In this document: positions 38,542 through 55,274 of the stretch, piece after piece
Numbering within the stretch: position 1 is the first letter of the stretch
Layout: every line of letters starts with the position of its first letter
Virus record (IMG/VR): IMGVR_UViG_3300042868_005134
Location: 310,001 to 374,000 of that record
DNA: 64,000 nt
Reading direction: 5' to 3' (one strand)
Translations under genes and position numbers: made by a program
Notes under the pieces: model-generated
The model's database searches: none
The model's input: the letters and a program-made list of their open reading frames with translations, nothing else
What the model was told of the DNA's origin: nothing

Positions 38542-39258
38542 TTATTGTTCTAGGAAAGATACTACTGCTCGCCTGGCTTCTGCTGAAGATACAGTTCCGT
38601 GTCCTTGTCCGTTTAATAGAACTAATTTACCATTTGTCCTGTCACCCCACTGTGAATCGCATTGAAAGCCTCCGTTAGCAAAATACGGATCGTTACCCCA
38701 AGATATAGCTATGATTGGTGTATTAGCACTAGCCATCACACCTAAGCTACATACAAATCCAGACACAATGACGCCTTTAAATCCCATATCGGGAGTGCGT
38801 GTCGCGGCCATAGCACCTTCGCTATGTCCCATTAAAAAAATACGTTTTTTGTCTGCCCATTTCATAGTTTGAAGTTGAGACATGGCATACGCTACTTCTG
38901 CTGGCCTAAGCCTGTTAACAGGTACTAATCTTAAATTGTTAATTCTCTCTGTGGTAGAGCAGTTAACAACTCGATTAGGTATTGCGAAAGAATCAGGTAA
39001 CACTACAATATATCCATTATCTTTCAGCAAACGAGCCCACTGTGTTTCCTCTTGTGTAATGCCTGTACACCCGTGCATCAAGACAACAACAGGCAGTGGA
39101 CTGGTTACTTCCACAGTACTAATTTGTTTGGTAAAGAAATTTCCAGGAACATGTACTTCGGCCTTTTCCCAGGATTTACTAATGTCGTAGGCTTCTAACG
39201 GCAATGCGTTAACAGAACTAGCTAATAAGAATAACAATGTAGCAATAATTTTAGACAT
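38542..39258 (-). CDS. Secreted alpha/beta hydrolase (dienelactone hydrolase-like)
   Basis: Signal peptide; MHGCTG; GHSEG nucleophile elbow; C-terminal GHG. Confidence 0.8.
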   Translation of the reverse strand: MSKIIATLLFLLASSVNALPLEAYDISKSWEKAEVHVPGNFFTKQISTVEVTSPLPVVVLMHGCTGITQEETQWARLLKDNGYIVVLPDSFAIPNRVVNCSTTERINNLRLVPVNRLRPAEVAYAMSQLQTMKWADKKRIFLMGHSEGAMAATRTPDMGFKGVIVSGFVCSLGVMASANTPIIAISWGNDPYFANGGFQCDSQWGDRTNGKLVLLNGQGHGTVSSAEARRAVVSFLEQ

Positions 39259-39712
39259 ACCAAATTTCCTTAAATCCTTCTTCTTCTGTTGGATCTTCCC
39301 AGCTAGCAATCATGCTGGCAATAACATGATCCGGAATCTCTTTGCCAGGGCGGCCCATCAATCGTCGCATTAGTTCCGTATGCTCAGGTGTCTTAAACAC
39401 CACGGCAATATGCTCATAGTCTGTTAACATGTTAAACTTGCGAGCACGACTTTTAACGGTAGTGCTTGTTTGATCCCAAATGATGTCGCGATTCATTTCA
39501 CGAGCCACAACAACTTCTTTTGCCATAAGGTCTACGGCAGTGGGCATAAAGTCTACAAACACTTCACTGTAGGTGCGTCCTACTTCCTTTGCGTAGATTT
39601 CAACCCATTTGTCTGTACTAATATGGGCACAGGTTAACGCCCAGTCTTGTTCAGCTACCCAGGTAGATTTTCCGCTACCTGGGACTCCAATTAGTTGATA
39701 ACACTTTGGCAT
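39251..39712 (-). CDS. P-loop kinase (AAA_33, polynucleotide kinase-like)
   Basis: GVPGSGKST, ISTD, IIWDQT. Confidence 0.8.
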   Translation of the reverse strand: MPKCYQLIGVPGSGKSTWVAEQDWALTCAHISTDKWVEIYAKEVGRTYSEVFVDFMPTAVDLMAKEVVVAREMNRDIIWDQTSTTVKSRARKFNMLTDYEHIAVVFKTPEHTELMRRLMGRPGKEIPDHVIASMIASWEDPTEEEGFKEIWYV

Positions 39713-39720
39713 AATACTCC

Positions 39721-40323
39721 TTACATTGTTGGGCCGTTGCCGTTTTTAAAACCTACACTGCCACCTTCGGCTTCGATACGAGCAATAACATCTTCGAACA
39801 AGATAGGTTCAAAGTCAGTTTGCTCCACGCAAACACAATGATAACGAACATCGTTCTCATCGCTGTATAAAACTTCGCCAGTTCTAGCATCAACACCGCG
39901 AGCCTTCTTCACACGGTTGGCGTGAGTGTGTCCGTGAATGTTAACTCCAAAACGACCCATGCTATCACTATGTAACGGGATATGGCTCAAGATCATTCCG
40001 TTCATAACATGATATGCTCGTAATTCACGGAAGTAAGTCCTATACTCGTCATCACGGAAGATGTCGTGGTTACCGCGGATTAAGACCTTGTCACCGTTTA
40101 AGCGACCTAATGTCTTTAATGCCTTACGGTTAATGACCGCATCACCTAAGTGATAAACTTTATCAGTTGGCTTAACTTTGGCGTTCCATTTAGCAACCAT
40201 GGCTTCGTCCATTTCCTCTGGACTGTCCCATGGCCTTAACTTGGTAACACCGTCGTTACGTGTGAAGCGACATACACCCATGTGACCAAAGTGTGTGTCG
40301 CTTACTAAAAATACACTAGGCAT
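39721..40323 (-). CDS. Calcineurin-like phosphoesterase
   Basis: SDTHFGH, HLGD, GNHD, SHIP, HGHTH. Confidence 0.9.
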   Translation of the reverse strand: MPSVFLVSDTHFGHMGVCRFTRNDGVTKLRPWDSPEEMDEAMVAKWNAKVKPTDKVYHLGDAVINRKALKTLGRLNGDKVLIRGNHDIFRDDEYRTYFRELRAYHVMNGMILSHIPLHSDSMGRFGVNIHGHTHANRVKKARGVDARTGEVLYSDENDVRYHCVCVEQTDFEPILFEDVIARIEAEGGSVGFKNGNGPTM

Positions 40324-40338
40324 ATTGCCCTCCTTTCT

Positions 40339-40509
40339 TTAATAAATTTCTTTTACAATTTTAAATTCTGTTCCTGGATACTTTGCTTTGAATTCGTCAG
40401 TTTTAACATAGTCGTTAAACTCTTTTGCGTTAAAAAACACTCGATGAAAAACTGATTTGTGATCCAGAGTAGTTACTGTGAGGTAAACTGATTTTGCTTT
40501 GCCAGCCAT
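40339..40509 (-). CDS. Hypothetical protein (56 aa)
   Basis: AAGGA RBS; MAGKAKSVYLTV...IVKEIY. Confidence 0.55.
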   Translation of the reverse strand: MAGKAKSVYLTVTTLDHKSVFHRVFFNAKEFNDYVKTDEFKAKYPGTEFKIVKEIY

Positions 40510-40521
40510 TAAAGTGTCCTT

Positions 40522-40923
40522 TTATTCAATTGCTTTTCTAAAAACTATCTCTTGTCGGGCAAAAGCATCTTGTTCCCAAGGCTGATCCAGATATTTTGTT
40601 CGTTTAGTGTAGCGTTTGCCGCACCAATAATTTACACCATTCTTTACTTTAAGAATGCCTTTGGCAAATTGGCGTACATGGACCATCTCGTGTGCCAGCG
40701 TAACTCCGATAGACTTGATAGACATAGTGGGTTTAATAACTATTACATAGCTATCCAAAATGTCCACAGGAACAGTATAACCCATTCCTTCACAATCTTG
40801 TTCTAATCGAATAACCAGCGACTTCCTAGTGTTGGTTAAGCCCAATTGCTCAACTATCGAAGGAAGAATAGCTTCGATAAACTTTTTCTTCGTTCGACTA
40901 CGTGCTTCTACAAGATAATCCAT
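40522..40923 (-). CDS. HEXXH metallopeptidase-like protein
   Basis: TLAHEMVHVRQ...QPWEQDA. Confidence 0.75.
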   Translation of the reverse strand: MDYLVEARSRTKKKFIEAILPSIVEQLGLTNTRKSLVIRLEQDCEGMGYTVPVDILDSYVIVIKPTMSIKSIGVTLAHEMVHVRQFAKGILKVKNGVNYWCGKRYTKRTKYLDQPWEQDAFARQEIVFRKAIE

Positions 40924-40948
40924 GCTCGCTCCTTGTTAGTGTAAATGT

Positions 40949-40977
40949 ATTATAACACAGAACTCGCGGTCAGTCAA
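40949..40977 (-). promoter_or_regulatory. sigma70-type promoter
   Basis: TTGACT-17 nt-TATAAT. Confidence 0.7.
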
Positions 40978-41437
40978 CCGATCTAAAAGTTCTCCAGTCG
41001 TCTAAATTAGGCTTTTCGTCCGAATCGTATGTCCAGCCGAGGGCTTTCATCATACGATGCTTGACCAAAAGATTTGGACTACGGAATCGACCCGTATCTT
41101 CAAAACCCAACATGACTCCAAGCTCACAAACCGCACCCGATCTGCAAACGCCGGCGTAGCAATGAACTACAACGTTCATACGGTTAGCCAAAGCGTGTTG
41201 TAGCAGTCGAACAAGTTCAGCGGCCTGCTCATGACTACACCGCATGGCTTCGTCTAATGCAAAGTCCTTTTCTTCTATGTCTAAAAATTCAAAGTTATGT
41301 TGTTCTTTGAACTTGTGTGCGGGTACGGGGCGCCAGCTGGCTGGATCAACAATGCTGATCAGCATACTGTTCTCTCCGGCTTCGTGATGGAACCTTGTGG
41401 GTATATCAGCAGCCGCTACGTTTTCAATCCATGGCAT
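40970..41437 (-). CDS. Cys-based (tyrosine/dual-specificity) phosphatase-like protein
   Basis: VHCYAGVCRSGA = HCX5R. Confidence 0.85.
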   Translation of the reverse strand: MPWIENVAAADIPTRFHHEAGENSMLISIVDPASWRPVPAHKFKEQHNFEFLDIEEKDFALDEAMRCSHEQAAELVRLLQHALANRMNVVVHCYAGVCRSGAVCELGVMLGFEDTGRFRSPNLLVKHRMMKALGWTYDSDEKPNLDDWRTFRSVD

Positions 41438-42501: not shown

Positions 42502-43602
42502 TTAAAAAGCATCGTAGTAGTGGAAGTTCTTTTCTTTCACTTTGGTAAGTGTAAGAGCATGACCATCCTTGTTCATGAAGATAAACATGCCACTTTGTGG
42601 ATCAATCTTTTGGATTTCAGCTGGCGTAAAACTAGCTTCTTCCCAGTTCCAATCTGCATCTTCCTTGTCGTCGTCTTTGTCAGTCCAGGGTAGGCCTGCG
42701 TTAGACACTTTGAACGACAAGTGGATCTTGCTTTGGAGTGGATTACCTTTCCATTCGCGAGACTCCAGATGCTTTTGTTCAACAGGAATACCTTTGAAGC
42801 TCAGTTGAGTTGAATACTTGTTGCCGTCATCAAATTCTGGTTTGGCATTCAACATCTTCAATGCTTCTTCAGGAGATTCATTGTAGCGATTCATTTCTTC
42901 AACTAATGCTTTCAGCATGTCAAAGTTGAACTGGTTAAACAACATGGCAATTGAGCAAATCTTAGCAATGTGTTCCTTGGCATTCAAGTTGTCCTCACAG
43001 TACTCGATGATAAAGTCCTGTGTCAAGCCTGTGTAGTCCAGCATGTAGTAGATACGACCTGGACGATTACGCATGTGGCTATCCACACGCCACTTGTCGT
43101 TACAGGTAATCACAAACATTTTCTTGCTGGGGAATACACCGTCCAACAAAGTCAGCATGGCTTCTTGCTCTTGTGCGTCGTAGACTTTTTCAAACTCGTC
43201 AAACAACACAACACATGGTTGCTCGATAGCCTGAATCAAGGCATTGAACTTATCACCGGTCCACGCATTGTTAATAACAATGGTAGGATGGCCTTGATTG
43301 GCTGCATGAATTGACAAGGCTTTTGCCAGCAAACTTTTGCCGCTACCTTTCTCACCAGTAAGCATTACGCCAGTGCTGGCACTACGATCCATGAATGTAT
43401 TAAAAATACGATTTGTATTTTTGTCTAAGTCGCCGTACCGCTTGCCTTTGATCTCAAACGAATCAATTTGTTCAAGATACAACTCACCACTCATTGGATT
43501 TTCTTTAATGGTAAAATTAGCCGCTGGTAGTGCCTCGTGTAGGTCCATGGCTTCTTTTGATGTTACACGAAACGAGATTCCTGATTTTAAAAAATATGAC
43601 AT
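42502..43602 (-). CDS. AAA+ ATPase
   Basis: Walker A GEKGSGKS, Walker B VLFDEFEK, NRPGRI. Confidence 0.9.
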   Translation of the reverse strand: MSYFLKSGISFRVTSKEAMDLHEALPAANFTIKENPMSGELYLEQIDSFEIKGKRYGDLDKNTNRIFNTFMDRSASTGVMLTGEKGSGKSLLAKALSIHAANQGHPTIVINNAWTGDKFNALIQAIEQPCVVLFDEFEKVYDAQEQEAMLTLLDGVFPSKKMFVITCNDKWRVDSHMRNRPGRIYYMLDYTGLTQDFIIEYCEDNLNAKEHIAKICSIAMLFNQFNFDMLKALVEEMNRYNESPEEALKMLNAKPEFDDGNKYSTQLSFKGIPVEQKHLESREWKGNPLQSKIHLSFKVSNAGLPWTDKDDDKEDADWNWEEASFTPAEIQKIDPQSGMFIFMNKDGHALTLTKVKEKNFHYYDAF

Positions 43603-43735: not shown

Positions 43736-45151
43736 TTACAGCTTGTAACGATCACTCATTACAGTCTTAAGCATGATGCCTTCTGGAGTGAACTGATCCA
43801 AGTCAGCGGCTAGCAAGCTAGTCATTATACTTGGGCTGAATCCACTTACCAATGCGGCACCACTCTTGTCAGCCTTAACAGGCACGTTGTCTGAACTGTT
43901 TAGGTTCCAGAAAACAACTTGTGGCATGCTGTAGCCTGCGGCTTCGAACTTGCGTTCGATCATTTCCATTGCGCTGTCGTCGTGCTTGGCGCATTGGTCA
44001 AACTGCATGTCACTCAAGATCAGCAACATGGCTGGCATGTCGCTGGCTGGTACTGAACCCTTAACCGCTACGTCTAGAATCTTGTTCATAGCCGCGTTTA
44101 GGTTAGTGCTCATGTCCCAATCACTCTTGCTCATTTGAGCAACCTTGTCAACAATGTTACCCTTTAGAGTAACAAGTTCTGGCTTGCTAGAGAAAGTCAA
44201 GAAAGTGTCCTTGAACACACCCTTGTTCTTGTCTGCTAGGTACAGGCCCAAGCTGATTGAAACATCCATACAAGTCACATTAGTGTTCTTTCCTGCTGGG
44301 CAAGACATAGAACCGCTAACGTCTACGATTGGCATGATGCTGGCATCTCCCACATAGTTTGGCAAAGCATCCCACTGTGCCACGATGTGGTCAGTGGCTG
44401 TCTTGTCCAAAATTGCACGGTTGTAGCTTCCGATAACACCCTTCAACACGTCATGTGGGAAGATTGCGCTGGCGTTAACCTTGACAGTCTTGTCACCACT
44501 TACCAACTTGGCCACATACTCAGCGAATGCTGGTGTGTGACGGCTGAATGCCTTCTTGTAGTTGCGTGAAGCAACACTTGGCACGTGACTGAAGTTGATG
44601 TTGTCCCAGTCGTTGGCACACATTTGTGTTTCCACAACTGTGGTCATTCCCACTAAACTCTTACGATACTGCTTTGGAGTCATTCCAAAGAATGCTCGTA
44701 CTTCAGCCGCAATCTTGCCCTTACGAGGAGTCCACTTTGCGGCCAGACCGTTACGGGCACGTAGGGCATCGCCCAACATGGTATAAGCGGCTGACTTCAA
44801 GTCAGGGTTAGTGAAGACAAAGATGTCATCCCAACGGCCAACTTCAGGGATCTTGCGTAGCAAAGCCAAAGCGGCGTCTGGGTCACGCTTTTCTAGATGT
44901 ACTAGAATGTCGCGGAACAATTGACGTTCACCTGCACCACCACGGACATCACGTGCCCATTGTGCGATGCGTAGTGCTACGTCACTGTTTTCTACATAAG
45001 CGGCAGTGAAGTCGCCTACAATGTTCTTACCACGGCTTGCGCCGATCTTGTAGAACAGGTCCACAGTGGCCTTGGCTGTGCTCTTACGTGCCTTCATGCC
45101 ATTGGCAGTACGGGCTTCTTGGTTTGCTATTGCTGTTACAAATGCGTTCAT
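43736..45151 (-). CDS. TROVE/Ro60-like RNA-binding protein with vWA domain (DUF2828-type)
   Basis: ARDVRGGAGER, GRWDD, AAKWTPR helical region; MIDAS DVSGSMS; STN; ILSDMQFD; VFWNL; LVSGFS. Confidence 0.8.
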   Translation of the reverse strand: MNAFVTAIANQEARTANGMKARKSTAKATVDLFYKIGASRGKNIVGDFTAAYVENSDVALRIAQWARDVRGGAGERQLFRDILVHLEKRDPDAALALLRKIPEVGRWDDIFVFTNPDLKSAAYTMLGDALRARNGLAAKWTPRKGKIAAEVRAFFGMTPKQYRKSLVGMTTVVETQMCANDWDNINFSHVPSVASRNYKKAFSRHTPAFAEYVAKLVSGDKTVKVNASAIFPHDVLKGVIGSYNRAILDKTATDHIVAQWDALPNYVGDASIMPIVDVSGSMSCPAGKNTNVTCMDVSISLGLYLADKNKGVFKDTFLTFSSKPELVTLKGNIVDKVAQMSKSDWDMSTNLNAAMNKILDVAVKGSVPASDMPAMLLILSDMQFDQCAKHDDSAMEMIERKFEAAGYSMPQVVFWNLNSSDNVPVKADKSGAALVSGFSPSIMTSLLAADLDQFTPEGIMLKTVMSDRYKL

Positions 45152-45162
45152 TTTATTACCTC

Positions 45163-45220
45163 ACAGAATGTGTTTTTTTTCGATATGCGTGAAAATTTAA
45201 AGTTGCTGTTAACATTCTAA
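45163..45220 (-). ncRNA. Family-1 element, copy 0 (in the 5' UTR of the TROVE-like gene)
   Basis: AGAATGT-TAACAGCAA...ACATTCT-GT, abutting the GAGGT RBS. Confidence 0.7.
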
Positions 45221-45475: not shown

Positions 45476-45650
45476 AACAGGATCGTTTTCTACTTTTTGT
45501 TTTTATCGAGGAGACTTATCGAAACTCCTCTATCTTCACTGTCCTTGCTTGCGCATTGTCTTTAACCTTCAAAGCCCCGAAAGGCTCCAGCTAATAACAG
45601 GGTAAGTGAAGCAATCCATAGTAATATGTAGTTGCTGTACCGATCCTAAA
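45476..45650 (-). ncRNA. Family-1 Y-like RNA, copy 2 (about 170 nt)
   Basis: AGGATCG-GTACAGCAA...CGATCCT-GTT; internal CTTCACT/AGTGAAG and GAGGAG/CTCCTC stems. Confidence 0.7.
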
Positions 45651-46488: not shown

Positions 46489-46610
46489 AACAGGATAGGC
46501 TTTGCCTTATTTTTTATTTAAAACTTGACAAAGCGAACAAGTTCGTCCGGGTCGCCCCAGACCTTTGATACGGTTATTCACCGTTAGTGGTTTGCTGTCT
46601 CTATCCTAAA
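46489..46610 (-). ncRNA. Family-1 Y-like RNA, copy 3
   Basis: AGGATAG-AGACAGCAAA...CTATCCT-GTT with internal hairpins. Confidence 0.7.
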
Positions 46611-46693: not shown

Positions 46694-46876
46694 TTACTTA
46701 TTTGTTGCTGTCTGTATATTATAATTGATTTGACTTTGTTTGTCAAGTCTTTCAAATTCTTCATCTTCAAGTTTGGCTTCTTCTAGACGCCTAGGATCAG
46801 GCTTTCGAAAAATAGTATCATAATTCGAACCAAATGCTTTCAAATCTGTTGGACGTTGTTTACTGCCCTTACTCAT
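46694..46876 (-). CDS. Hypothetical protein
   Basis: AGGAG RBS; MSKGSKQRP...NYDTIF. Confidence 0.55.
   Translation of the reverse strand: MSKGSKQRPTDLKAFGSNYDTIFRKPDPRRLEEAKLEDEEFERLDKQSQINYNIQTATNK
46718..46746 (-). promoter_or_regulatory. Consensus sigma70 promoter
   Basis: TTGACA-17 nt-TATAAT. Confidence 0.8.
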
Positions 46877-47517: not shown

Positions 47518-47546
47518 ATTATACAATCTAGCTGTGAGTATGTCAA
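47518..47546 (-). promoter_or_regulatory. Consensus sigma70 promoter
   Basis: TTGACA-17 nt-TATAAT; predicted start coincides with the 5' end of the tRNA-like RNA. Confidence 0.8.
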
Positions 47547-47806: not shown

Positions 47807-47817
47807 ATAAAAATGAA

Positions 47818-48036
47818 TTTGTTAAAGATGTTCCACCACATTATAGGAACCATTCACCCGAATTAACAAGCTCGAGCGGGATTCGGTAAGTTACTTGGAA
47901 TACTTGTCCAGCTTGCAACCGATCTGCCCGCGGACACTACGTGCCCGGGTGGGAGTCGAACCCATTACCTTCTACTATATCAGTCCTTCGAAGAAACCTA
48001 GATAGCGTGACTTTCTCTTGCTAACACTCTAACAAA
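47818..48036 (-). ncRNA. Structured RNA with internal T-arm and loop-closed stem
   Basis: Terminal TTTGTTAGAG-TGTT/AACA-TCTTTAACAAA pairing; TGGG-TTCGACT-CCCA followed by CGGGCAC-GTA-GTGTCCG. Confidence 0.5.
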
Positions 48037-48039
48037 ACT

Positions 48040-48928: not shown

Positions 48929-48934
48929 ATAAAT

Positions 48935-49019
48935 TGGTGGAGATTACTGGGATCGAACCAGTCGTGCCCGAAGGCGGCGGATTTACAGTCCACTGCATCA
49001 CCATTGATGCTTCATCTCC
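48935..49019 (-). tRNA. tRNA-Tyr(GTA)
   Basis: GTGGA-CTGTAAA-TCCGC; variable arm; CCA. Confidence 0.9.
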
Positions 49020-49020
49020 A

Positions 49021-49090
49021 TATAGAAACACACTAACACCGCTGGCAAAGTAATTATATTACTTGATACGATACCTAATGTATTTCTATA
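49021..49090 (-). ncRNA. Family-2 long-stem element
   Basis: TATAGAAATACATTA/TAGTGTGTTTCTATA stem; inner AAGTAAT-ATA-ATTACTT. Confidence 0.5.
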
Positions 49091-49219: not shown

Positions 49220-49248
49220 ATTATAGCGTCTTCTGAGGTTGCTGTCAA
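49220..49248 (-). promoter_or_regulatory. Consensus sigma70 promoter heading tRNA array A
   Basis: TTGACA-17 nt-TATAAT. Confidence 0.85.
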
Positions 49249-49260
49249 CTACTTTTTGAA

Positions 49261-50679
49261 TTATTTTAAATTATATTCTAAATAATTCTTAAAAAATTCT
49301 TTATTTTTTTCAGCAAGTAACTTATAGTCTAGGTCTTGTTTGTTTGTATTCATTATTTCAGAAAACTCAAAACCCGCACTCGCATGTTCTCCCAAACGCC
49401 AAGACGTTGGCTTACCAATATGGTCCATTATAGAATTTAGTGACTTAGAAAATTCTGTTACTGTTTTTGCGTCCCAGTAATCGTTTTCCCAAAACTCTGT
49501 CTGTAATGGTTTCATAAATCTGTAACCGTACTGGCTATAGTTCTCATCAAACTTACTTTTGTAGGCCGAAGCTGGATCTCTAGATATCCCTAATGGATTA
49601 AATCTCCAATCATACATTTCATTGTCCAAACACCACTGATGAGTAGCGTATAAATCTTCTCTAGTTTCACCAGTTAGCCCAGCAATAAAACTCAATTCAA
49701 ATGTTATTTCGTCTTTCCATGTTTGCTTTAATGTTTGTAAAAATTCTTTTCCGTGTACGCCATTCCAACCTTTACCTACAATTTTACAAGCATCCTTATG
49801 AAAACTTTCAATTCCAAAGTATGCGCTTTTGAGTCCTGAGTCTTTTAATTGCTGTATTGAACCTGGTCGAGATCCTATCAAATCTAATCGATTGTAGCCA
49901 ATCCATTCTAACTTAAATGGTAAATTTTGTACTATTTCAGTTATAGCTTCCATTTTTTCCTGACTCTCGTTAACTGTATCATCAATGAAAAAATATCTAG
50001 TTGTACCAAACGTTTCGTAATTGTACATAAGTTCTTCCTTAACCAAGGAATAATCTCTTAGATAAGTATTTTTCTTTTTACCTAGATTAGGATATCTGCA
50101 AAATGAACAAGAAAACTGACAGCCCCGACCTAATTCAATTGGCAACACTTCGTACGATTGAACAAAGTCATCTTTCACAAAAGCAGGACTAAGTGTTTTA
50201 ATATCAAAAGGTGTCCGCGTTAACGATACATTAGATTCCTGATCTAGAAATTTTAATAAATCATTCTCAGCATTTCCGTGCAGCTTAATCCAATCTAAAT
50301 AGCAATTTTTTGCGTATGAATTAGAGCCTCCTAAAATCCATTTTAACTGAGGGAACTTATTTTCAAGTAGTGGCCTCGAGTTTAAAATCCATTCGGGTTC
50401 GCTCACTACCATAGATAGTCTGCCAGTCGTTGTTGCTTTGCGTAATGCCCCGTCGTGCCAAAATGTAGAACTTACACCTATGCCTATAGTTGTAGAGTCT
50501 ACAAATTTCGAAGTTACTTCAACTAATTCATTAGTAGTAAATTTCTGACAAAAGTCTATTACTTTAACAGTATAGCCATGTCTCCTTAACCATGCGGCTA
50601 ATTGATACGGACCCAGTGGTCTCGTATGTCCCGATTTATCTGGTAGATAAATCGAATTCCAAATTATAAAATGTGCCAT
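49261..50679 (-). CDS. B12-binding-domain radical SAM protein
   Basis: RPLGPYQLAAWLRRHG N-terminus; ELGRGCQFSCSFC; FIDDT; GIES. Confidence 0.88.
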   Translation of the reverse strand: MAHFIIWNSIYLPDKSGHTRPLGPYQLAAWLRRHGYTVKVIDFCQKFTTNELVEVTSKFVDSTTIGIGVSSTFWHDGALRKATTTGRLSMVVSEPEWILNSRPLLENKFPQLKWILGGSNSYAKNCYLDWIKLHGNAENDLLKFLDQESNVSLTRTPFDIKTLSPAFVKDDFVQSYEVLPIELGRGCQFSCSFCRYPNLGKKKNTYLRDYSLVKEELMYNYETFGTTRYFFIDDTVNESQEKMEAITEIVQNLPFKLEWIGYNRLDLIGSRPGSIQQLKDSGLKSAYFGIESFHKDACKIVGKGWNGVHGKEFLQTLKQTWKDEITFELSFIAGLTGETREDLYATHQWCLDNEMYDWRFNPLGISRDPASAYKSKFDENYSQYGYRFMKPLQTEFWENDYWDAKTVTEFSKSLNSIMDHIGKPTSWRLGEHASAGFEFSEIMNTNKQDLDYKLLAEKNKEFFKNYLEYNLK

Positions 50680-50712
50680 GAGATATTTATTGTACTATCG
50701 ATCTCATGAAAA

Positions 50713-51378
50713 TTAACTAATATGTAGGACAGGAATAGTTACTTTCGGTTTTGCTGGATATTTTAAATCTGGTTTTGTATGATGAATCCGTCTGTTTCTA
50801 TTAATATCTTTATAACCAACTCCTAAAATTATCATAGGCTGTCCCTGGATATTTAACACTGTCTGAAGACCGGCTATATCAAAGCATCCGCAATAACCTG
50901 TTGAGTATCCTAATTGATGTGCTAATAGATTCAAGTATCCACTAGCTATACCTATGGACATGTGAATGTCGATTAACATACGTTTCTTTGCCGTATCCGA
51001 CACTAAGCCTGCTGGATGTCTAAACTCTTCAAAGTACGTATTCAAATACGGCCTGTCTGAATTAGCTGTAAGTATATCTGCTAGTGTTAACTGTTCGAAT
51101 ACTACTAACATGTTTGCCAATGTTTGTGAATTATTTTCTATGCTCATTGAGGGTGGAAAATCGAAACCACTTGTATTGTTGTAAACTTGTTCTATTACAG
51201 TCCGATTAGTAATAAAATGGCATCGATAAAATGCAGCATTTTGTTTACTGGGGCATTGGGTTACTGCTTCAACTAATAAGTCGATATCTTCTTGCGGAAT
51301 TGATCGTGTTAAATCCCAATTTCGTTGGCAATGTTGACTTTTTTGAATAGTAATTTTTACTGCTGATTTATCGATCAT
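50713..51378 (-). CDS. Nitroreductase family protein
   Basis: QRNW...IP...CPSKQN; IGIASG...LGYSTGYCG; GVGY. Confidence 0.8.
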   Translation of the reverse strand: MIDKSAVKITIQKSQHCQRNWDLTRSIPQEDIDLLVEAVTQCPSKQNAAFYRCHFITNRTVIEQVYNNTSGFDFPPSMSIENNSQTLANMLVVFEQLTLADILTANSDRPYLNTYFEEFRHPAGLVSDTAKKRMLIDIHMSIGIASGYLNLLAHQLGYSTGYCGCFDIAGLQTVLNIQGQPMIILGVGYKDINRNRRIHHTKPDLKYPAKPKVTIPVLHIS

Positions 51379-51562: not shown

Positions 51563-51569
51563 AAAATTT

Positions 51570-51645
51570 TGGCAGGGGAGATGAGATTCGAACTCATGAT
51601 GACGATTTCAAAGACCGTTGCCTTAGGCCACTAGGCGACACCCCA
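51570..51645 (-). tRNA. tRNA-Gln(TTG)
   Basis: ACGGT-CTTTGAA-ATCGT; CCA. Confidence 0.88.
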
Positions 51646-51653
51646 ACAAATAA

Positions 51654-51776
51654 AACAGGATACGTTTTTTACGAAGGGCATGGAGCCCTTTGCTCAACCG
51701 CTGAGCGAATCTGCCATAAGGCAAATGTTGGAATCGAACCAACGTGTCATAAATGACTTTGCTGTGCGTATCCTTA
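51654..51776 (-). ncRNA. Family-1 copy 4: YrlA-like circularly permuted tRNA mimic
   Basis: AGGATACG/CGTATCCT helix + ACAGCAAA enclosing T-arm, loop-closed acceptor stem, D-arm and anticodon-like arm, in that order. Confidence 0.8.
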
Positions 51777-51779
51777 ACT

Positions 51780-51899
51780 TGGTGTCGTTGCTGGGATTCG
51801 AACCCAGATCTCTTCCTTTAGAGTGGAATTTTGATTGTGCTGACTGTATCCTTAACAGGATAACCTTTTATAAGCGTCCTACCATTAGACGACAACGAC
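51780..51899 (-). ncRNA. Family-1 copy 5: 120 nt tRNA-like RNA with internal family-1 helix and CTA loop
   Basis: GTCGTTG/CAACGAC-ACCA; D- and T-arms; insertion TATCCT-GTTA-AGGATA-CAGTCAGCA; TTCC-ACTCTAAA-GGAA. Confidence 0.7.
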
Positions 51900-51904
51900 A
51901 TGAC

Positions 51905-51981
51905 TGGTACCCCTAGGCAGATTCGAACCGCCATCCAGCAGATTTTAAGTCTACCCGCACTACCAATTAGCGTACAGGGGC
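51905..51981 (-). tRNA. tRNA-Leu(TAA), short variable loop
   Basis: GTAGA-CTTAAAA-TCTGC; CCA. Confidence 0.88.
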
Positions 51982-52158
51982 ATAAATATTTTTGTGAAAA
52001 CTTACGATCACTTAACACCGCAAGGATTACAGTTTCACCTTTGTTTGTACCAAGGTGTGTGCTGTGTTATGGTACACGATATATACGACAACACCTACTT
52101 CGAATTACAATACTTCACTGACGTTAACAAAGCACTTCGCTTTGTCAACAATTTATAA

Positions 52159-52235
52159 TGGTACCCCTTGTCTGATTCGAACAGACAGCCAACTCCTTTT
52201 GAGAGAATCCGCACTACCAATTAGCGTAAAGGGGC
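52159..52235 (-). tRNA. tRNA-Leu(CAA), short variable loop
   Basis: Loop CT-CAA-AA; CCA. Confidence 0.88.
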
Positions 52236-52238
52236 ATA

Positions 52239-52315
52239 TGGTACCTTCGGGCGGGTTCGAACCCCCAACCAACAGTTTCTAAAACTATCCGCACTCCCAA
52301 TTAGCGTACGAAGGC
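52239..52315 (-). tRNA. tRNA-Leu(TAG), short variable loop
   Basis: Loop TT-TAG-AA; CCA. Confidence 0.85.
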
Positions 52316-52326
52316 ATTTAAATTTT

Positions 52327-52401
52327 TGGTAGTCGATGCTGGGTTCGAACCAGCGACCTACACGATGTCAACGTGGTGCTCTACCACTGAGCTAATCGAC
52401 T
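52327..52401 (-). tRNA. tRNA-Val(GAC)
   Basis: Loop TT-GAC-AT; CCA. Confidence 0.92.
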
Positions 52402-52402
52402 A

Positions 52403-52477
52403 TGGTACCCTTGGACAGTTTCGAAATGTCGACCCTCGCCTTATCAAGACGATGCTCTTCCTCTGAGCTACAAGGGC
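52403..52477 (-). tRNA. tRNA-Ile(GAT)
   Basis: TCGTC-TTGATAA-GGCGA; CCA. Confidence 0.9.
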
Positions 52478-52491
52478 ATAAACTACTTAGG

Positions 52492-52562
52492 GGTGACTAT
52501 CGGGGCTCGAACCCGAACTACCAGAGTCACAGTCTAGGTTGCTACCATTACAACATAGCCAC
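52492..52562 (-). tRNA. tRNA-His(GTG), no encoded CCA or G-1
   Basis: CTAGA-CTGTGAC-TCTGG; C73. Confidence 0.85.
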
Positions 52563-52574
52563 ACCTAAATAGTC

Positions 52575-52648
52575 TGGTCCTCTCGACAAGAATCGAACTT
52601 GTAATGGCCGGTTATCAGCCGACTGTTATACCATTTAACTACAAGAGG
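52575..52648 (-). tRNA. tRNA-Ile(GAT)
   Basis: GTCGG-CTGATAA-CCGGC; CCA. Confidence 0.88.
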
Positions 52649-52654
52649 AATAAA

Positions 52655-52720
52655 AACAGGATAGCATTTTTTGGCTTTTTTTACAGAAAAGATTTTTTTG
52701 ATTTGCTGTTGCTATCCTAA
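52655..52720 (-). ncRNA. Family-1 copy 6: mini RNA with GTA (Tyr) anticodon stem-loop
   Basis: AGGATAGCA/TGCTATCCT; ACAGCAAA; CTTTT-CTGTAAA-AAAAG. Confidence 0.75.
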
Positions 52721-52812: not shown

Positions 52813-52974
52813 ATATAGGTTTTCCCGGCGACCAACTATCTTTCTTAAGGACTCGCTGGCTTGTCTCGTGTGAAAGAGTTTATACAGACCTTGTACAATT
52901 CTACTGGCGTGTCATGCTCAAGAAATAGGGCACTAGAATACAAGGGACTCATCTCAACGTCTAGCTGGGAAACT

Positions 52975-53066
52975 TGGCGGAAGACGGAGGAGTCGAACCC
53001 CATCCCATTTCTGAGAACCCAGTTTTCAAGGCTGGTCGGCGCACCAACGCACCTGCATCATCTTCC
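52975..53066 (-). tRNA. tRNA-Ser(TGA), 8/4-type cloverleaf
   Basis: 8 bp acceptor GGAAGATG/CGTCTTCC; 4 bp T-stem; 6 bp D-stem; loop CT-TGA-AA; CCA. Confidence 0.8.
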
Positions 53067-53072
53067 ATAACT

Positions 53073-53786: not shown

Positions 53787-53846
53787 AACAGGATGCTTAT
53801 TTTTCAATTAAAAGTTGAATTTTTGAATTTGCTGTTCGCATCCTAA
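53787..53846 (-). ncRNA. Family-1 copy 7: mini RNA with TTT (Lys) anticodon stem-loop
   Basis: AGGATGC/GCATCCT; ACAGCAAA; TTCAA-CTTTTAA-TTGAA. Confidence 0.75.
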
Positions 53847-54320: not shown

Positions 54321-54324
54321 ATGT

Positions 54325-54399
54325 TGGTATCGCGTACGGGGATCGAACCCGCCTGAGTAAGTTGAAAGCCTACGGACCTCACCAGAAGTCAAACGCGAT
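54325..54399 (-). tRNA. tRNA-Glu(TTC)
   Basis: GTAGG-CTTTCAA-CTTAC; CCA. Confidence 0.85.
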
Positions 54400-54406
54400 G
54401 TAATAA

Positions 54407-54468
54407 AACAGGATAGCATCTTTTTTCCATTAAAAGTGAAATTAGAATTTTTGCTGTTGCTATCCTAA
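54407..54468 (-). ncRNA. Family-1 copy 8: mini RNA with TTT (Lys) anticodon stem-loop
   Basis: AGGATAGCA/TGCTATCCT; ACAGCAAA; TTTCA-CTTTTAA-TGGAA. Confidence 0.75.
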
Positions 54469-54471
54469 AAT

Positions 54472-54559
54472 TGGTGGAGGCTGATGGAATCGAACCACTT
54501 GACAGCCACCCTGCTTAATATGTCTACCGGGTTACAGCCGGCAACAGGGAACAACCTCC
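54472..54559 (-). tRNA. Atypical D-armless tRNA-Tyr(GTA)-like gene
   Basis: GGAGGTT/AGCCTCC-ACCA; GCCGG-CTGTAAC-CCGGT; normal T-arm; no D hairpin. Confidence 0.65.
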
Positions 54560-54817
54560 AATTTGTTAACACACTCACGACCGGTAATTACCAATCCATA
54601 AGCAAACTATGTTCACTTATAAAGAATGTGTATATTAAAAGCCACTAGCAGGAAGAACTATGTTCCACTAGCCTCCAAGGACTAGCCCAACACCAATTGC
54701 TTTTAATATGACAGATTTTTCGCTCTAGAAGAAGAGTTTCATCCTTGCCACCGCCCGTTTGCCCATGTTTTAAGTGCGGGCCAGGACCTCGTTTCCTGTA
54801 TGTTCACACTTTGCGGT

Positions 54818-55245: not shown

Positions 55246-55274
55246 ATTATAACGCCTTTCAGCGTCCCTGTCAA
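55246..55274 (-). promoter_or_regulatory. Consensus sigma70 promoter P1
   Basis: TTGACA-17 nt-TATAAT. Confidence 0.88.

What the first reader, a model, noticed from the sequence alone, without database searches (positions are those of the whole stretch)
51654..51776. Complete circularly permuted tRNA held in the family-1 handle
Seen (minus strand, 5' to 3'): handle AGGATACG-CACAGCAAA; hairpin GTCAT-TT-ATGAC (variable-arm-like); T-arm GTTGG-TTCGATT-CCAAC; 7 bp acceptor stem closed by a loop, ATTTGCC-TTAT-GGCAGAT; TC; D-arm GCTC-AGCGGTT-GAGC; A; anticodon-like arm AAGGG-CT CCA TG-CCCTT; handle CGTATCCT. Established: bacterial YrlA Y RNAs have a T-arm, loop-closed acceptor stem and D-arm in this order. 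Unusual here: an anticodon-like arm (CCA) is also retained, so all four arms are present. This is the strongest support for reading family 1 as Y RNA-like.
Basis: partly seen in the sequence, partly recalled or inferred. Interest (0 to 1): 0.8.

Follow-up and report, generated by a model that had tools for sequence, protein, structure and literature searches.

The report
Phage tRNA-shaped Y-RNA-like small RNA
A lake-water phage carries, inside its tRNA gene array, a 118-base RNA folded like a tRNA whose ends have been moved to a clamp stem; it most likely partners a Ro60-like ring protein encoded nearby, a new variant of the bacterial "Y RNA" tRNA mimics.

Summary
Window 51657-51774 (minus strand) folds as described: an 8-bp handle, a variable-arm hairpin, a T-arm, a 7-bp acceptor stem closed by a loop, a D-arm and a fifth hairpin in the anticodon-arm position. 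When the halves are rejoined, ARAGORN calls it tRNA-Trp(cca).

It is a conserved structured RNA. In 12 homologues from related phages, 99% of cells pair and 11 of 23 pairs show compensatory changes. Metatranscriptome contigs cover it, while the neighbouring protein genes have no depth.

It is not a tRNA gene:
- It has no encoded CCA.
- The "anticodon" varies between close variants and the loop length is not fixed.
- Most homologues lack that arm.

The architecture (V, T, closed acceptor, D) is that of YrlA-type Y RNAs. The 471-aa gene at 43736-45151 (Pfam DUF2828+DUF7788) is predicted to have the Ro60 fold (Z 21). "Family 1" RNAs (stem, 3 nt, CAGCAA) sit beside such genes in coliphage, Listeria, mycobacterial, rhizobial, Vibrio and cyanobacterial phages.

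It fails Rfam's YrlA threshold (20.8 against 69 bits) and lacks the GNCGAA motif. I therefore call it a new variant of a known kind. Protein binding and function are inferred, not shown.

The parts
51657..51774 (-). The element: a 118-nt family-1 RNA with a tRNA-like body (open handle, closed acceptor)
   Evidence: MFE fold. Covariance model R1 scores it 74.8 bits, E 2.6e-14.
51767..51774 (-). Handle 5' strand AGGATACG
   Evidence: Pairs with 51657-51664. The handle covaries between family-1 copies and between phages.
51758..51766 (-). Single-stranded CACAGCAAA, containing the family-wide CAGCAA motif 3 nt after the handle
   Evidence: Invariant CAGCA(A) in alignments A2 and A5. The same motif and spacing occur in cultured phages.
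51746..51757 (-). Variable-arm-like hairpin GTCA-TTTA-TGAC
   Evidence: It corresponds to the YrlA 'V' stem-loop.
51727..51743 (-). T-arm GTTGG-TTCGATT-CCAAC
   Evidence: Aligned to the YrlA T stem-loop.
51709..51726 (-). 7-bp acceptor stem ATTTGCC/GGCAGAT closed by the loop TTAT; no CCA
   Evidence: Six of its 7 pairs show compensatory changes in 12 homologues.
51692..51706 (-). D-arm GCTC-AGCGGTT-GAGC, preceded by U8-like T at 51708
51674..51690 (-). Fifth hairpin in the anticodon-arm position, AAGGG-CUCCAUG-CCCUU
   Evidence: Specific to one clade. The stem covaries (AAGGC/GCCUU, ACGGC/GCCGU, AUGGC/GCCAU), while the loop length and sequence vary.
51657..51664 (-). Handle 3' strand CGTATCCT, preceded by A-rich CGTAAAAAA (51665-51673) and followed by GTTTTAT
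   Evidence: The 3' flank is G in 155 of 156 family members.
51780..51899 (-). Adjacent topological isomer. It is a tRNA-shaped RNA with an open 7-bp acceptor and an encoded ACCA end. Its anticodon arm is replaced by a closed handle hairpin TATCCT-GTTA-AGGATA followed by CAGTCAGCA.
   Evidence: Seven homologues; 9 of 30 pairs covary.
54410..54466 (-). Family-1 copy, short (57 nt)
53790..53844 (-). Family-1 copy, short (55 nt)
52658..52718 (-). Family-1 copy, short (61 nt)
46492..46607 (-). Family-1 copy, 116 nt, with a different structured insert that is not tRNA-like
45479..45647 (-). Family-1 copy, 169 nt, behind a promoter-like site at 45713-45685
45165..45218 (-). Family-1 copy, 54 nt, ending 13 nt before the start codon of the Ro60-like gene
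   Evidence: The same position is conserved in related loci at about 9931-9985, before a gene start at 10001.
43736..45151 (-). Gene for a 471-aa Ro60-like protein (Pfam DUF2828 + DUF7788; helical-repeat ring plus vWA domain with a DxSxS MIDAS motif)
   Evidence: Pfam and PHROG hits. AF2 model with pLDDT 92.7. The top 10 Foldseek hits are all Ro60/TROVE. VIA-align Z is 21.1 to 1yvr over 410 residues. MIDAS residues are invariant.
42502..43602 (-). AAA+ ATPase gene directly downstream of the Ro60-like gene; membership in the system is uncertain
55246..55274 (-). Perfect sigma-70 consensus promoter-like site (TTGACA-17-TATAAT) upstream of the array segment that holds the element
   Evidence: This is a consensus match only.

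Best explanation
The element is a stable small RNA of the Y-RNA type, the counterpart of bacterial YrlA for a divergent Ro60-like protein family (DUF2828).

Proposed steps:
- It is transcribed on the minus strand as part of the long tRNA-array precursor. It is released by the processing that frees the flanking tRNAs.
- Its two ends pair into an 8-bp handle. The handle, the adjacent single-stranded CAGCAA motif and the opposing A-rich strand form the module shared by all seven family-1 RNAs of this phage. I infer that this module is the docking site for the phage's Ro60-like ring protein, as the terminal stem and conserved motif of Y RNAs are for Ro60.
- The rest of the RNA is an effector module that copies the L-shape of a tRNA. 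This copy is unusually complete, because a hairpin also fills the anticodon-arm position.
- I infer that the tRNA-like module lets the RNP be recognised by proteins that handle tRNAs, such as modification enzymes and RNase P. The 7-bp acceptor makes cleavage in the acceptor loop plausible, as shown for M. smegmatis YrlA. Nucleases and repair enzymes are other candidates. This would tie the Ro-like ring to tRNA surveillance or repair during infection.

Shown here: the sequence, the fold, covariation, the family, presence in RNA libraries, and the Ro60 fold of the neighbouring gene.
Inferred: protein binding, processing sites and biological role.
For: - Structure: the MFE fold equals the described cloverleaf.
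- Covariation: in 12 homologues 99.3% of cells pair and 11 of 23 pairs have double changes. No shuffle of 500 reaches this, and slid controls pair at 34-43%.
- Covariance model: true members score 75-132 bits, while real tRNA-tRNA junctions score about 30 bits.
- tRNA likeness: the de-permuted sequence is called a tRNA. U8, A14, the G15:C48 pair, G18G19, T54-T55-C56 and A58 are present.
- YrlA architecture: the order V, T, AS, D matches Chen 2014. The best Rfam hit is YrlA over the T/AS/D region.
- Protein: the gene at 43736-45151 has a predicted Ro60 fold. Mycobacteriophage homologues are annotated 'Ro-like RNA binding protein'.
- Family 1: 156 of 183 distinct 5' motifs have an exact complementary arm downstream, against 2 in each control, and there are 11 different handles.
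- Strand bias: the strict pattern occurs 7 times on the gene's strand and 0 times on the other strand in the window. In six cultured-phage loci it occurs 16 times against 0, always next to the DUF2828 gene.
- Bridge to YrlA: phage Zaria's copy scores 39.8 bits on Rfam YrlA over the full model length.
- RNA evidence: metatranscriptome contigs cover 51568-51766 (1 difference), 51649-51784 and 51648-51778. The coding stretch 49284-51307 has zero depth in all four runs.
- Context: RNA end-healing-like genes lie nearby, and an RtcB gene lies near the Listeria phage homologue.
- Precedent: M. smegmatis YrlA has a 7-bp acceptor stem, is cleaved by RNase P and receives CCA.
Against: - No binding data exist for any DUF2828 protein and these RNAs.
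- The element fails Rfam's YrlA gathering score (20.8 against 69 bits).
- It lacks the GNCGAAN0-1G motif thought to contact Ro60. It has CAGCAA instead.
- It lies 6.5 kb from the Ro-like gene, further than the 4 kb typical of YrlA, although other family-1 copies lie much closer.
- Pfam does not place the protein in TROVE, and no PDB sequence match exists.
- The RNA evidence comes from assembled contigs of metatranscriptomes. It gives no ends, no strand and no proof of a discrete 118-nt species.
- Short family-1 members could be processing spacers.
Confidence: 0.7

Rival explanations
1. The element is a tRNA mimic that works on its own, for example as a decoy or competitor for host anticodon nucleases, tRNA-modifying enzymes or other tRNA-binding defence proteins. 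In this reading the handle is only a clamp and processing signal, and the Ro60-like protein is not its partner.
For: The body is a very complete tRNA copy with an anticodon-position hairpin whose loop always begins Y-U. It sits in a 38-tRNA array of the kind phages carry. No binding evidence links it to the protein.
Against: The same handle and CAGCAA module is shared by RNAs with quite different, non-tRNA inserts. The module follows the DUF2828 gene even in a phage locus with no tRNAs nearby, mycobacteriophage Zaria. Most homologues lack the anticodon-position arm that a nuclease decoy would need.
Confidence: 0.15
2. The family-1 elements are cis-acting sites, either autoregulatory binding sites or processing or termination signals in the tRNA precursor. 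The tRNA-like insert would then be a passenger without its own function.
For: One copy ends 13 nt before the Ro-like gene's start codon, in this phage and in its relatives. The elements lie between tRNAs, are flanked by U-rich spacers, and are followed by GUUUU.
Against: The tRNA-like insert is conserved, with compensatory changes and invariant T- and D-loop residues, across phages whose handle and acceptor sequences differ. Two topological isomers of the same body are both maintained.
Confidence: 0.07
3. It is a true circularly permuted tRNA gene. [quoted passage not shown]
For: The de-permuted sequence is called tRNA-Trp(cca). The acceptor stem is 7 bp. Permuted tRNA genes with intervening sequences as short as 1 nt are known (PMC3978253).
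Against: - No CCA is encoded, while 37 of 38 array tRNAs encode it.
- The 'anticodon' differs between near-identical variants (CCA, AAA, CAA), and many variants have 6-nt loops.
- Position 37 is a pyrimidine in the window copy.
- Most homologues have no such arm.
- The termini form an 8-bp stem next to a 9x9 internal loop, not a bulge-helix-bulge.
- Known cases are confined to algae and one archaeon.
- The array already has a tRNA-Trp, and the element is no closer to it than to other tRNAs.
Confidence: 0.03
4. It is a chance or decaying remnant: the 3' half of one tRNA gene next to the 5' half of the next.
For: The covariance model of the family also picks up genuine tRNA-tRNA junctions at about 30 bits.
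Against: The two acceptor strands are complementary to each other and covary. The element scores 75 bits. It is conserved in many contigs and is present in RNA libraries.
Confidence: 0.02

Closest known systems
YrlA (Y RNA-like A) of Salmonella, Mycobacterium smegmatis and TROVE-encoding mycobacteriophages (Chen et al. 2014, PMC4201824; Rfam RF02553)
   Same: - The 5' and 3' ends pair, with a conserved single-stranded motif just inside the 5' strand.
- Inside lie V, T, loop-closed acceptor and D stem-loops in that order, with tRNA tertiary-contact residues including G15:C48.
- It is encoded on the same strand as a Ro60-fold protein, together with shorter sibling RNAs that share the protein-binding end (like YrlB).
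- The 7-bp acceptor matches M. smegmatis YrlA, which RNase P cleaves.
   Different: - The motif is CAGCAA, not GNCGAAN0-1G.
- It scores 20.8 bits against the 69-bit threshold on RF02553, and only over the T/AS/D region.
- The partner is a DUF2828-type protein, not a Pfam-TROVE protein.
- There is an extra hairpin in the anticodon-arm position.
- There are seven family members per genome, interleaved with tRNA genes, and a co-existing isomer with an open CCA acceptor.
Deinococcus radiodurans Yrn1
   Same: It is a Y RNA with a T-arm and a stem-loop modelled as an anticodon arm, with a 5-bp stem and a 6-nt loop. Many variants of the present clade also have a 5-bp stem and a 6-nt loop.
   Different: In Yrn1 the hairpin between the T and D elements takes the anticodon position and there is no closed acceptor or V arm. 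Here the acceptor, the anticodon-position hairpin and the V hairpin are all present.
Yrl1 and Yrl2 of Thermus phage phiLo with phage Ro60 (PMC12135203; PDB 9KOP, 9L5Y)
   Same: Phage-encoded Ro60-fold protein with several small RNAs encoded just upstream on the same strand. Each RNA has a 5'-3' stem flanking an internal loop with a conserved motif. The phiLo protein is among the best structural matches of the window's protein.
   Different: The phiLo RNAs carry the CGAA motif, and that paper does not describe a tRNA-like domain. The protein there is a recognised TROVE protein.
Circularly permuted tRNA genes of Cyanidioschyzon merolae, green algae and Thermofilum pendens (PMC3978253)
   Same: [quoted passage not shown]
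   Different: Those genes have a bulge-helix-bulge at the termini, mature through a circular intermediate into aminoacylated tRNAs, and have fixed anticodons. Here there is no BHB, no CCA and no conserved anticodon, and most relatives lack the arm.
tmRNA and other tRNA mimics, including two-piece permuted tmRNA
   Same: A T-arm and acceptor mimic embedded in a larger RNA. Permuted gene order also occurs in some tmRNAs.
   Different: No mRNA-like reading frame and no open aminoacylatable acceptor in this element. Rfam tmRNA models give only noise-level hits.

Membership tests
YrlA / bacterial Y RNA (Chen 2014; Rfam RF02553) | tRNA-like domain with V, T, loop-closed acceptor (AS) and D stem-loops in this 5'-to-3' order | tested here: met
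   MFE fold. Consensus fold and pair counts on 12 homologues. Alignment to RF02553 positions 30-81.
YrlA / bacterial Y RNA (Chen 2014; Rfam RF02553) | Conserved tRNA tertiary-contact residues, including the 15:48 Levitt pair | tested here: met
   T8, A14, G15 with C48, G18G19, T54-T55-C56-G57-A58 and C61 are read directly from the sequence. Position 21 is T in this copy, while most homologues have A.
YrlA / bacterial Y RNA (Chen 2014; Rfam RF02553) | GNCGAAN0-1G motif near the 5' end (the presumed Ro60 contact) | tested here: not met
   The 5' region reads AGGATACG-CACAGCAAAG. The family-wide motif is CAGCAA.
YrlA / bacterial Y RNA (Chen 2014; Rfam RF02553) | Score at or above Rfam's gathering threshold (69 bits) on RF02553 | tested here: not met
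   20.8 bits, E 0.036 in a 271-nt search, model positions 30-81 only. There was no hit when 10 kb or 64 kb were searched.
YrlA / bacterial Y RNA (Chen 2014; Rfam RF02553) | Encoded near (typically within 4 kb) and on the same strand as a Ro60 (TROVE) orthologue | tested here: inconclusive
   It is on the same strand, but 6.5 kb from the gene. Sibling family-1 RNAs lie 13 nt and 0.3 kb from it. The protein has the Ro60 fold (Z 21.1), but it matches Pfam DUF2828/DUF7788, not TROVE.
YrlA / bacterial Y RNA (Chen 2014; Rfam RF02553) | Bound by the Ro60 protein in vivo, and carrying tRNA-type modifications (pseudouridine 55, dihydrouridine) | not testable with these tools
   Needs immunoprecipitation and modification mapping.
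Circularly permuted tRNA gene (PMC3978253) | The 3' half lies upstream of the 5' half, and the rejoined sequence forms a canonical cloverleaf | tested here: met
   ARAGORN calls the de-permuted sequence tRNA-Trp(cca) with three different own-letter variable regions.
Circularly permuted tRNA gene (PMC3978253) | Termini form a bulge-helix-bulge motif for the splicing endonuclease | tested here: not met
   The termini form an 8-bp perfect stem followed by a 9x9 internal loop. There is no 3-nt bulge / 4-bp helix / 3-nt bulge.
Circularly permuted tRNA gene (PMC3978253) | Yields a decoding tRNA with a conserved anticodon loop and a CCA end | tested here: not met
   The loop sequence and length vary among 11 close variants. 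The arm is absent in most homologues. No CCA is encoded, against 37 of 38 array tRNAs. The maturation pathway itself cannot be tested here.
Canonical tRNA gene | Recognised by tRNA gene finders in genomic order | tested here: not met
   Not called by ARAGORN or by Rfam RF00005.
'Family 1' handle-CAGCAA RNAs (defined here) | A 7-9-bp terminal stem, a 1-3-nt spacer, CAGCA(A) after the 5' strand, an A-rich stretch before the 3' strand and G after it; on the strand of a DUF2828 gene | tested here: met
Ro60 / TROVE protein family (for the gene at 43736-45151) | Helical-repeat ring plus a C-terminal vWA domain with a MIDAS motif | tested here: met
   AF2 pLDDT is 92.7. Foldseek's top 10 hits are all Ro60/TROVE, E 2e-7 to 6e-5. 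VIA-align Z is 21.1 over 410 residues against 8.8 for the best unrelated chain. D277, S279 and S281 are invariant. This is a predicted structure, and sequence-level membership in Pfam TROVE is not met.

The most novel reading that the evidence does not exclude
Family 1 may be the first glimpse of an undescribed and very widespread class of phage small RNAs: a terminal stem, 3 nt, then CAGCAA. These would be the Y-RNA equivalents for the DUF2828 branch of Ro60-like proteins.

That protein family matched 706 cultured phage records by tblastn, including Felix O1-like, Listeria Pecentumvirus-type, staphylococcal, mycobacterial, Vibrio and cyanobacterial phages.

In this class the same protein-docking module carries interchangeable effector modules, among them a tRNA body in two topologies:
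- Open handle with a closed acceptor (this finding).
- Closed handle with an open acceptor and an encoded CCA end (the neighbouring element), which could be charged or could engage CCA-dependent enzymes.

The RNP would link phage tRNA arrays to an RNA surveillance or repair machine.
Probability: 0.45. Interest if true: 0.85.

Novelty: new variant of a known kind. Interest (0 to 1): 0.66.

Why it matters
Y RNAs and Ro60 are conserved from bacteria to humans, but what the tRNA-like module of bacterial Y RNAs does is still unknown.

- **A more complete mimic.** This element is a fuller tRNA mimic than any YrlA described in the papers read here. It has natural variants that differ in informative ways: with or without the anticodon-position arm, and with the chain ends at the handle or at the acceptor.
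- **A function for a DUF.** It gives a testable function to a large domain-of-unknown-function family (DUF2828) present in hundreds of cultured phages, including well-studied laboratory phages. The question therefore becomes experimentally tractable.
- **Unannotated gaps explained.** It suggests that many unannotated gaps in phage tRNA arrays encode partner RNAs of a Ro-like RNP. This bears on current work on phage tRNAs and tRNA-targeting bacterial defences.

Tried and rejected
- **Rfam at gathering thresholds and at E up to 10** (64 kb and 10 kb). Nothing was found at the element. Only when 271 nt were searched did a weak local YrlA hit appear.
- **DNA similarity to 50,697 cultured phage records**. 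Only the neighbouring tRNA-Gln matched, so there is no close cultured relative.
- **Sequence search of the protein against PDB**. No hit, so a fold comparison was needed.
- **Pfam at E up to 10**. No TROVE hit.
- **Literature search for DUF2828**. Only unrelated plant papers.
- **Searches for phage Y RNAs**. These found YrlA, phiLo and jumbo-phage papers, but none describing a CAGCAA-handle RNA or a DUF2828 partner RNA. The library lacks most subscription journals, so this is not proof of novelty.
- **Origin from the phage's own tRNA-Trp**. Rejected. The de-permuted element shares 47-50 identical positions with its best-matching tRNAs (Phe, Thr, Ala, Val), and tRNA-Trp is not among the top eight.
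- **ARAGORN on the whole closed circle with the handle kept as a giant variable arm**. No call was made, as expected from the size limits.
- **Metagenome-wide pattern scan for more variants of the fifth hairpin**. The 65 hits were all chance matches without family context.
- **Fixed-column pair counts on the fifth hairpin.** Not feasible, because hairpin lengths differ, so covariation there was read from the sequences.
- **Terminator reading of the handle**. The scan flags only the T-arm as a weak terminator-like site and finds no terminator at the handle.
Full report
**What is in the sequence**

The window is phage-like and has 40.8% G+C. Near-identical DNA is held by lake-water metagenomes. 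A minus-strand array of 38 ARAGORN-called tRNA genes runs from 45.7 to 54.4 kb.

The flagged stretch lies between tRNA-Leu(taa) and tRNA-Gln(ttg).
- handle AGGATACG
- CACAGCAAA
- hairpin GTCA-TTTA-TGAC
- AC
- T-arm GTTGG-TTCGATT-CCAAC
- acceptor ATTTGCC-TTAT-GGCAGAT
- TC
- D-arm GCTC-AGCGGTT-GAGC
- A
- AAGGG-CTCCATG-CCCTT
- CGTAAAAAA
- handle CGTATCCT

The exact element is 51774 to 51657. An unconstrained fold gives all of these helices (-45.2 kcal/mol, z -4.87). Neither ARAGORN nor Rfam's tRNA model sees it in genomic order. When the 5' half is placed before the 3' half with the element's own linker letters, ARAGORN calls tRNA-Trp(cca).

**It is a conserved, structured RNA and not a remnant**

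The Ro-like protein described below brought in 80 related viral contigs. BLAST, a regular-expression scan and a covariance model built here (R1) find homologues of the element in many of them.

In a 12-sequence alignment the handle, T-arm, closed acceptor and D-arm are all kept:
- 99.3% of cells pair.
- 11 of 23 pairs have changes on both sides, including 6 of the 7 acceptor pairs.
- None of 500 column shuffles reaches these values.
- Structures slid by 1-3 columns pair at only 34-43%.

True members score 75-132 bits on R1. The model's false positives are genuine junctions between two adjacent tRNA genes and score about 30 bits. This rules out the idea that the element is merely such a junction.

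Four lake-water metatranscriptomes hold contigs that cover the element: 51568-51766 with one difference, 51649-51784 and 51648-51778. All four have zero depth over the 2 kb of protein-coding DNA next door (49284-51307). This argues for RNA rather than carried-over DNA. These are assembled contigs, so they give no ends or strand.

Perfect sigma-70 consensus sites on the minus strand lie upstream of the array segments, for example at 55274-55246. This fits polycistronic transcription, but it is only a consensus match.

**The fifth arm**

Most homologues go straight from the D-arm through a short A-rich linker to the handle. They have the four YrlA-type stem-loops and no anticodon-position hairpin.

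Two exact-pattern scans of the viral collection found the clade that does have the hairpin: 11 distinct sequences in about 18 contigs.
- The stem is real. It occurs as AAGGG/CCCUU, AAGGC/GCCUU, ACGGC/GCCGU and AUGGC/GCCAU, so two of its five pairs covary.
- It always starts one base after the D-arm, as an anticodon stem does.
- The loop is not a conserved anticodon loop. With a 5-bp stem it has 6 or 7 nt (CUCCAUG, UUAAACA, CUAAACA, CUCAAAA, UUCCAA, UUUCAA, UUCACA, UUCAUC).
- In several variants, including the window's, one more pair can form.
- Only the initial Y-U is constant.

Other points against a tRNA gene:
- The acceptor loop holds no CCA, whereas 37 of 38 array tRNAs encode it.
- The rejoined sequence is no closer to the phage's own tRNA-Trp than to other tRNAs.
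- The termini form a plain 8-bp stem, not the bulge-helix-bulge that defines permuted tRNA genes.

So the copy in the window has a complete tRNA shape, but it is a mimic and not a permuted tRNA gene.

**Family 1**

The handle belongs to a repeat family with seven copies in the window, all on the minus strand and none on the plus strand of the 64 kb.

The consensus is: UUUU, a 7-9-bp stem, 1-3 nt, CAGCAA, a variable insert, an A-rich stretch, the complementary stem strand, then GUU. Inserts range from about 35 nt to about 150 nt, and only this copy is tRNA-like.

Across the related contigs:
- 156 of 183 distinct 5' motifs have an exact 7-nt complement 30-267 nt downstream.
- Only 2 do in each of the upstream and shuffled controls.
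- Eleven different handle sequences occur, so the stem covaries while CAGCAA does not change.
- One copy always ends a few bases before the start codon of the gene at 43736-45151.

**The neighbouring gene is Ro60-like**

The 471-aa protein matches Pfam DUF2828 and DUF7788 and PHROG 850 'RNA-binding protein'. It has no PDB sequence match and no Pfam TROVE hit.

An AlphaFold model built on 70 diverse homologues has pLDDT 92.7.
- Its ten best Foldseek matches in the PDB are all Ro60/TROVE structures: Xenopus Ro60 with and without RNA, human-type complexes, Deinococcus Rsr and the Ro60 of Thermus phage phiLo. E-values run from 2e-7 to 6e-5 over the full length.
- VIA-align gives Z 21.1 over 410 residues. 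The best unrelated chain, which matches the vWA domain only, gives 8.8.
- The DxSxS MIDAS residues are invariant.
- Homologues in some mycobacteriophage records are already annotated 'Ro-like RNA binding protein'.

**The RNA-protein association is general**

tblastn finds the protein family in 706 cultured phage records. I looked at six loci. In each, handle-NNN-CAGCAA elements sit on the gene's strand and never on the other strand (16 against 0 with a strict pattern). In five of the six they lie within about 2 kb of the gene.
- Cyanophage BUCT-ZZ01: three directly upstream of the gene.
- Listeria phage AG20: three directly upstream of the gene.
- Mycobacterium phage Zaria: three in the gap directly downstream of the gene, in a locus with no annotated tRNA genes.
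- Escherichia phage wV8: four among the tRNAs that follow the gene.
- Sinorhizobium phiM12 and Vibrio phage K575: single copies. The K575 copy lies about 3.7 kb upstream of the gene.

The handles all differ (AGACCAA, TGAGCGC, AGGAATC, AGGTTGC and others). Zaria's middle element contains a T-arm, a closed acceptor and a D-arm. It scores 39.8 bits over the whole Rfam YrlA model, which is below threshold but has E 1.5e-7 locally. BUCT-ZZ01 has two tRNA-like members detected by R1.

**Comparison with YrlA**

Chen et al. 2014 define YrlA by several features:
- V, T, AS and D stem-loops in this order.
- tRNA tertiary residues, including the 15:48 pair.
- A GNCGAAN0-1G motif near the 5' end.
- Location within about 4 kb of a TROVE gene, on the same strand.

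They also show that M. smegmatis YrlA, which has a 7-bp acceptor stem, is cleaved by RNase P and receives CCA in vivo.

The window element meets the architectural and tertiary-residue criteria and has a 7-bp acceptor. Its best Rfam match is YrlA, but only 20.8 bits against a 69-bit threshold, and only over the T/AS/D region. It has CAGCAA instead of GNCGAA, and its protein partner belongs to a different sequence family. I therefore say that it works like a YrlA but is not a member of the Rfam family.

Phage Ro60 with Y-like RNAs is itself known. Examples are mycobacteriophages, CcrColossus, Bacillus phage G and phiLo, with a RYPER-like complex containing host PNPase in phiLo.

**A topological isomer next door**

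Directly upstream on the minus strand, at 51899-51780, lies a 120-nt RNA gene with a normal open 7-bp acceptor, an encoded ACCA end, a D-arm and a T-arm. Where the anticodon arm should be, it has the handle closed into a hairpin (TATCCT-GTTA-AGGATA). This is followed by CAGTCAGCA and a V-like hairpin.

It is colinear with the finding after circular permutation. Seven homologues exist, with compensatory acceptor, D and T changes (9 of 30 pairs). The same two modules, docking handle and tRNA body, are thus maintained with the chain ends at either place. This supports the view that the handle is a self-contained functional module.

**Mechanism, and how sure**

I commit to the Y-RNA model with confidence of about 0.7:
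- The RNA is cut out of the tRNA precursor.
- The handle-CAGCAA module docks on the Ro60-like ring.
- The tRNA-like module presents the RNP to tRNA-handling proteins.

The genomic context fits a link to RNA end-healing and repair, like the Salmonella rsr-yrlBA-rtcBA operon cited in the papers read. A polynucleotide-kinase-like gene and a phosphoesterase gene lie 3.4-4.5 kb downstream. An RtcB gene lies near the Listeria phage homologue.

Binding, processing sites and role are all inferences. The main rival, at about 0.15, is a free-standing tRNA decoy.

**Novelty**

This is a new variant of a known kind. The kind, Ro60 with tRNA-mimicking Y RNAs including in phages, is established. The new features are:
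- the docking motif
- the protein branch
- the multi-copy modular family interleaved with tRNA genes
- the fifth arm
- the pair of isomers

No Rfam family and no paper in the searchable library describes them. That library is incomplete, so this is not proof.

Noticed in passing
window 51780-51899 (minus strand): A tRNA-shaped RNA gene with an open 7-bp acceptor and an encoded ACCA end. Its anticodon arm is replaced by the family-1 handle closed into a hairpin (TATCCT-GTTA-AGGATA), followed by CAGTCAGCA. It is a circular permutation of the finding, and it is conserved in at least seven related contigs with compensatory changes.
   Followed up: yes
L093 5719-6493; L096 5416-5663; L097 3664-3926; L081 11651-11978; L095 2047-2127; L094 74-264: Handle-NNN-CAGCAA small elements lie on the gene's strand, and in five of the six phages within about 2 kb of DUF2828 (Ro60-like) genes. 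The phages are cultured and unrelated: Escherichia wV8, Mycobacterium Zaria, Listeria AG20, Synechococcus BUCT-ZZ01, Sinorhizobium phiM12 and Vibrio K575 (the K575 copy is about 3.7 kb from its gene). Each has a different handle sequence. This looks like a broad RNA class that is not in Rfam.
   Followed up: partly
window 49261-51378 (minus strand): Two protein genes are embedded in the tRNA array: a B12-binding radical SAM enzyme similar to methyltransferases (472 aa) and a nitroreductase-family protein (221 aa). They might be RNA- or base-modifying enzymes. They have no depth in four metatranscriptomes in which the flanking array RNAs are covered.
   Followed up: no
window 39251-41437 (minus strand): A P-loop kinase (AAA_33; weak PHROG match to polynucleotide kinase), a calcineurin-type phosphoesterase and a dual-specificity-phosphatase-like protein lie 2.3-4.5 kb downstream of the Ro60-like gene. 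They may form an RNA end-healing set. An AAA+ ATPase (42502-43602) lies directly after the Ro-like gene.
   Followed up: partly
window 55246-55274, 49220-49248, 47518-47546, 46718-46746 (minus strand): Four perfect 12-of-12 sigma-70 consensus promoter-like sites (TTGACA-17-TATAAT) all face into segments of the tRNA and small-RNA array. The site at 46746-46718 overlaps a CAGACAGCAA sequence that the repeat finder listed as an eighth family-1 copy, but that sequence has no handle.
   Followed up: no
window 54321-54409, 54467-54620, 52813-53072, 48929-49090 (minus strand): Several non-canonical tRNA-like genes are missed by ARAGORN. They have acceptor and T-arms with CCA ends but odd D-arms or long insertions, and Rfam scores them as weak tRNA or tRNA-Sec matches. 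The one at 48938-49019 looks like a class II tRNA with anticodon GTA.
   Followed up: no
window 47807-48039 (minus strand): This unannotated gap contains a T-arm (TGGG-TTCGACT-CCCA) directly followed by a long closed stem (CCCGGGCAC-GTAG-TGTCCGCGGG). It has no family-1 handle. It may be another kind of tRNA-derived structured RNA.
   Followed up: no
window 51649/52653 junction: Metatranscriptome contigs of related phages join 51649 to 52653, skipping 1003 bases. These are relatives whose array lacks this block, including the finding. In them the short family-1 copy is followed directly by tRNA-Gln, as in locus L019. This is array-content variation between strains, not splicing.
   Followed up: partly
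L054 159-271; L064 1375-1486; L071 3164-3280; L072 317-427: A second subfamily of tRNA-like family-1 RNAs, with a short 4-bp closed 'acceptor' (AGCC-GAAA-GGTT) and a different T-arm. Some phages, such as L054, carry both subfamilies.
   Followed up: partly
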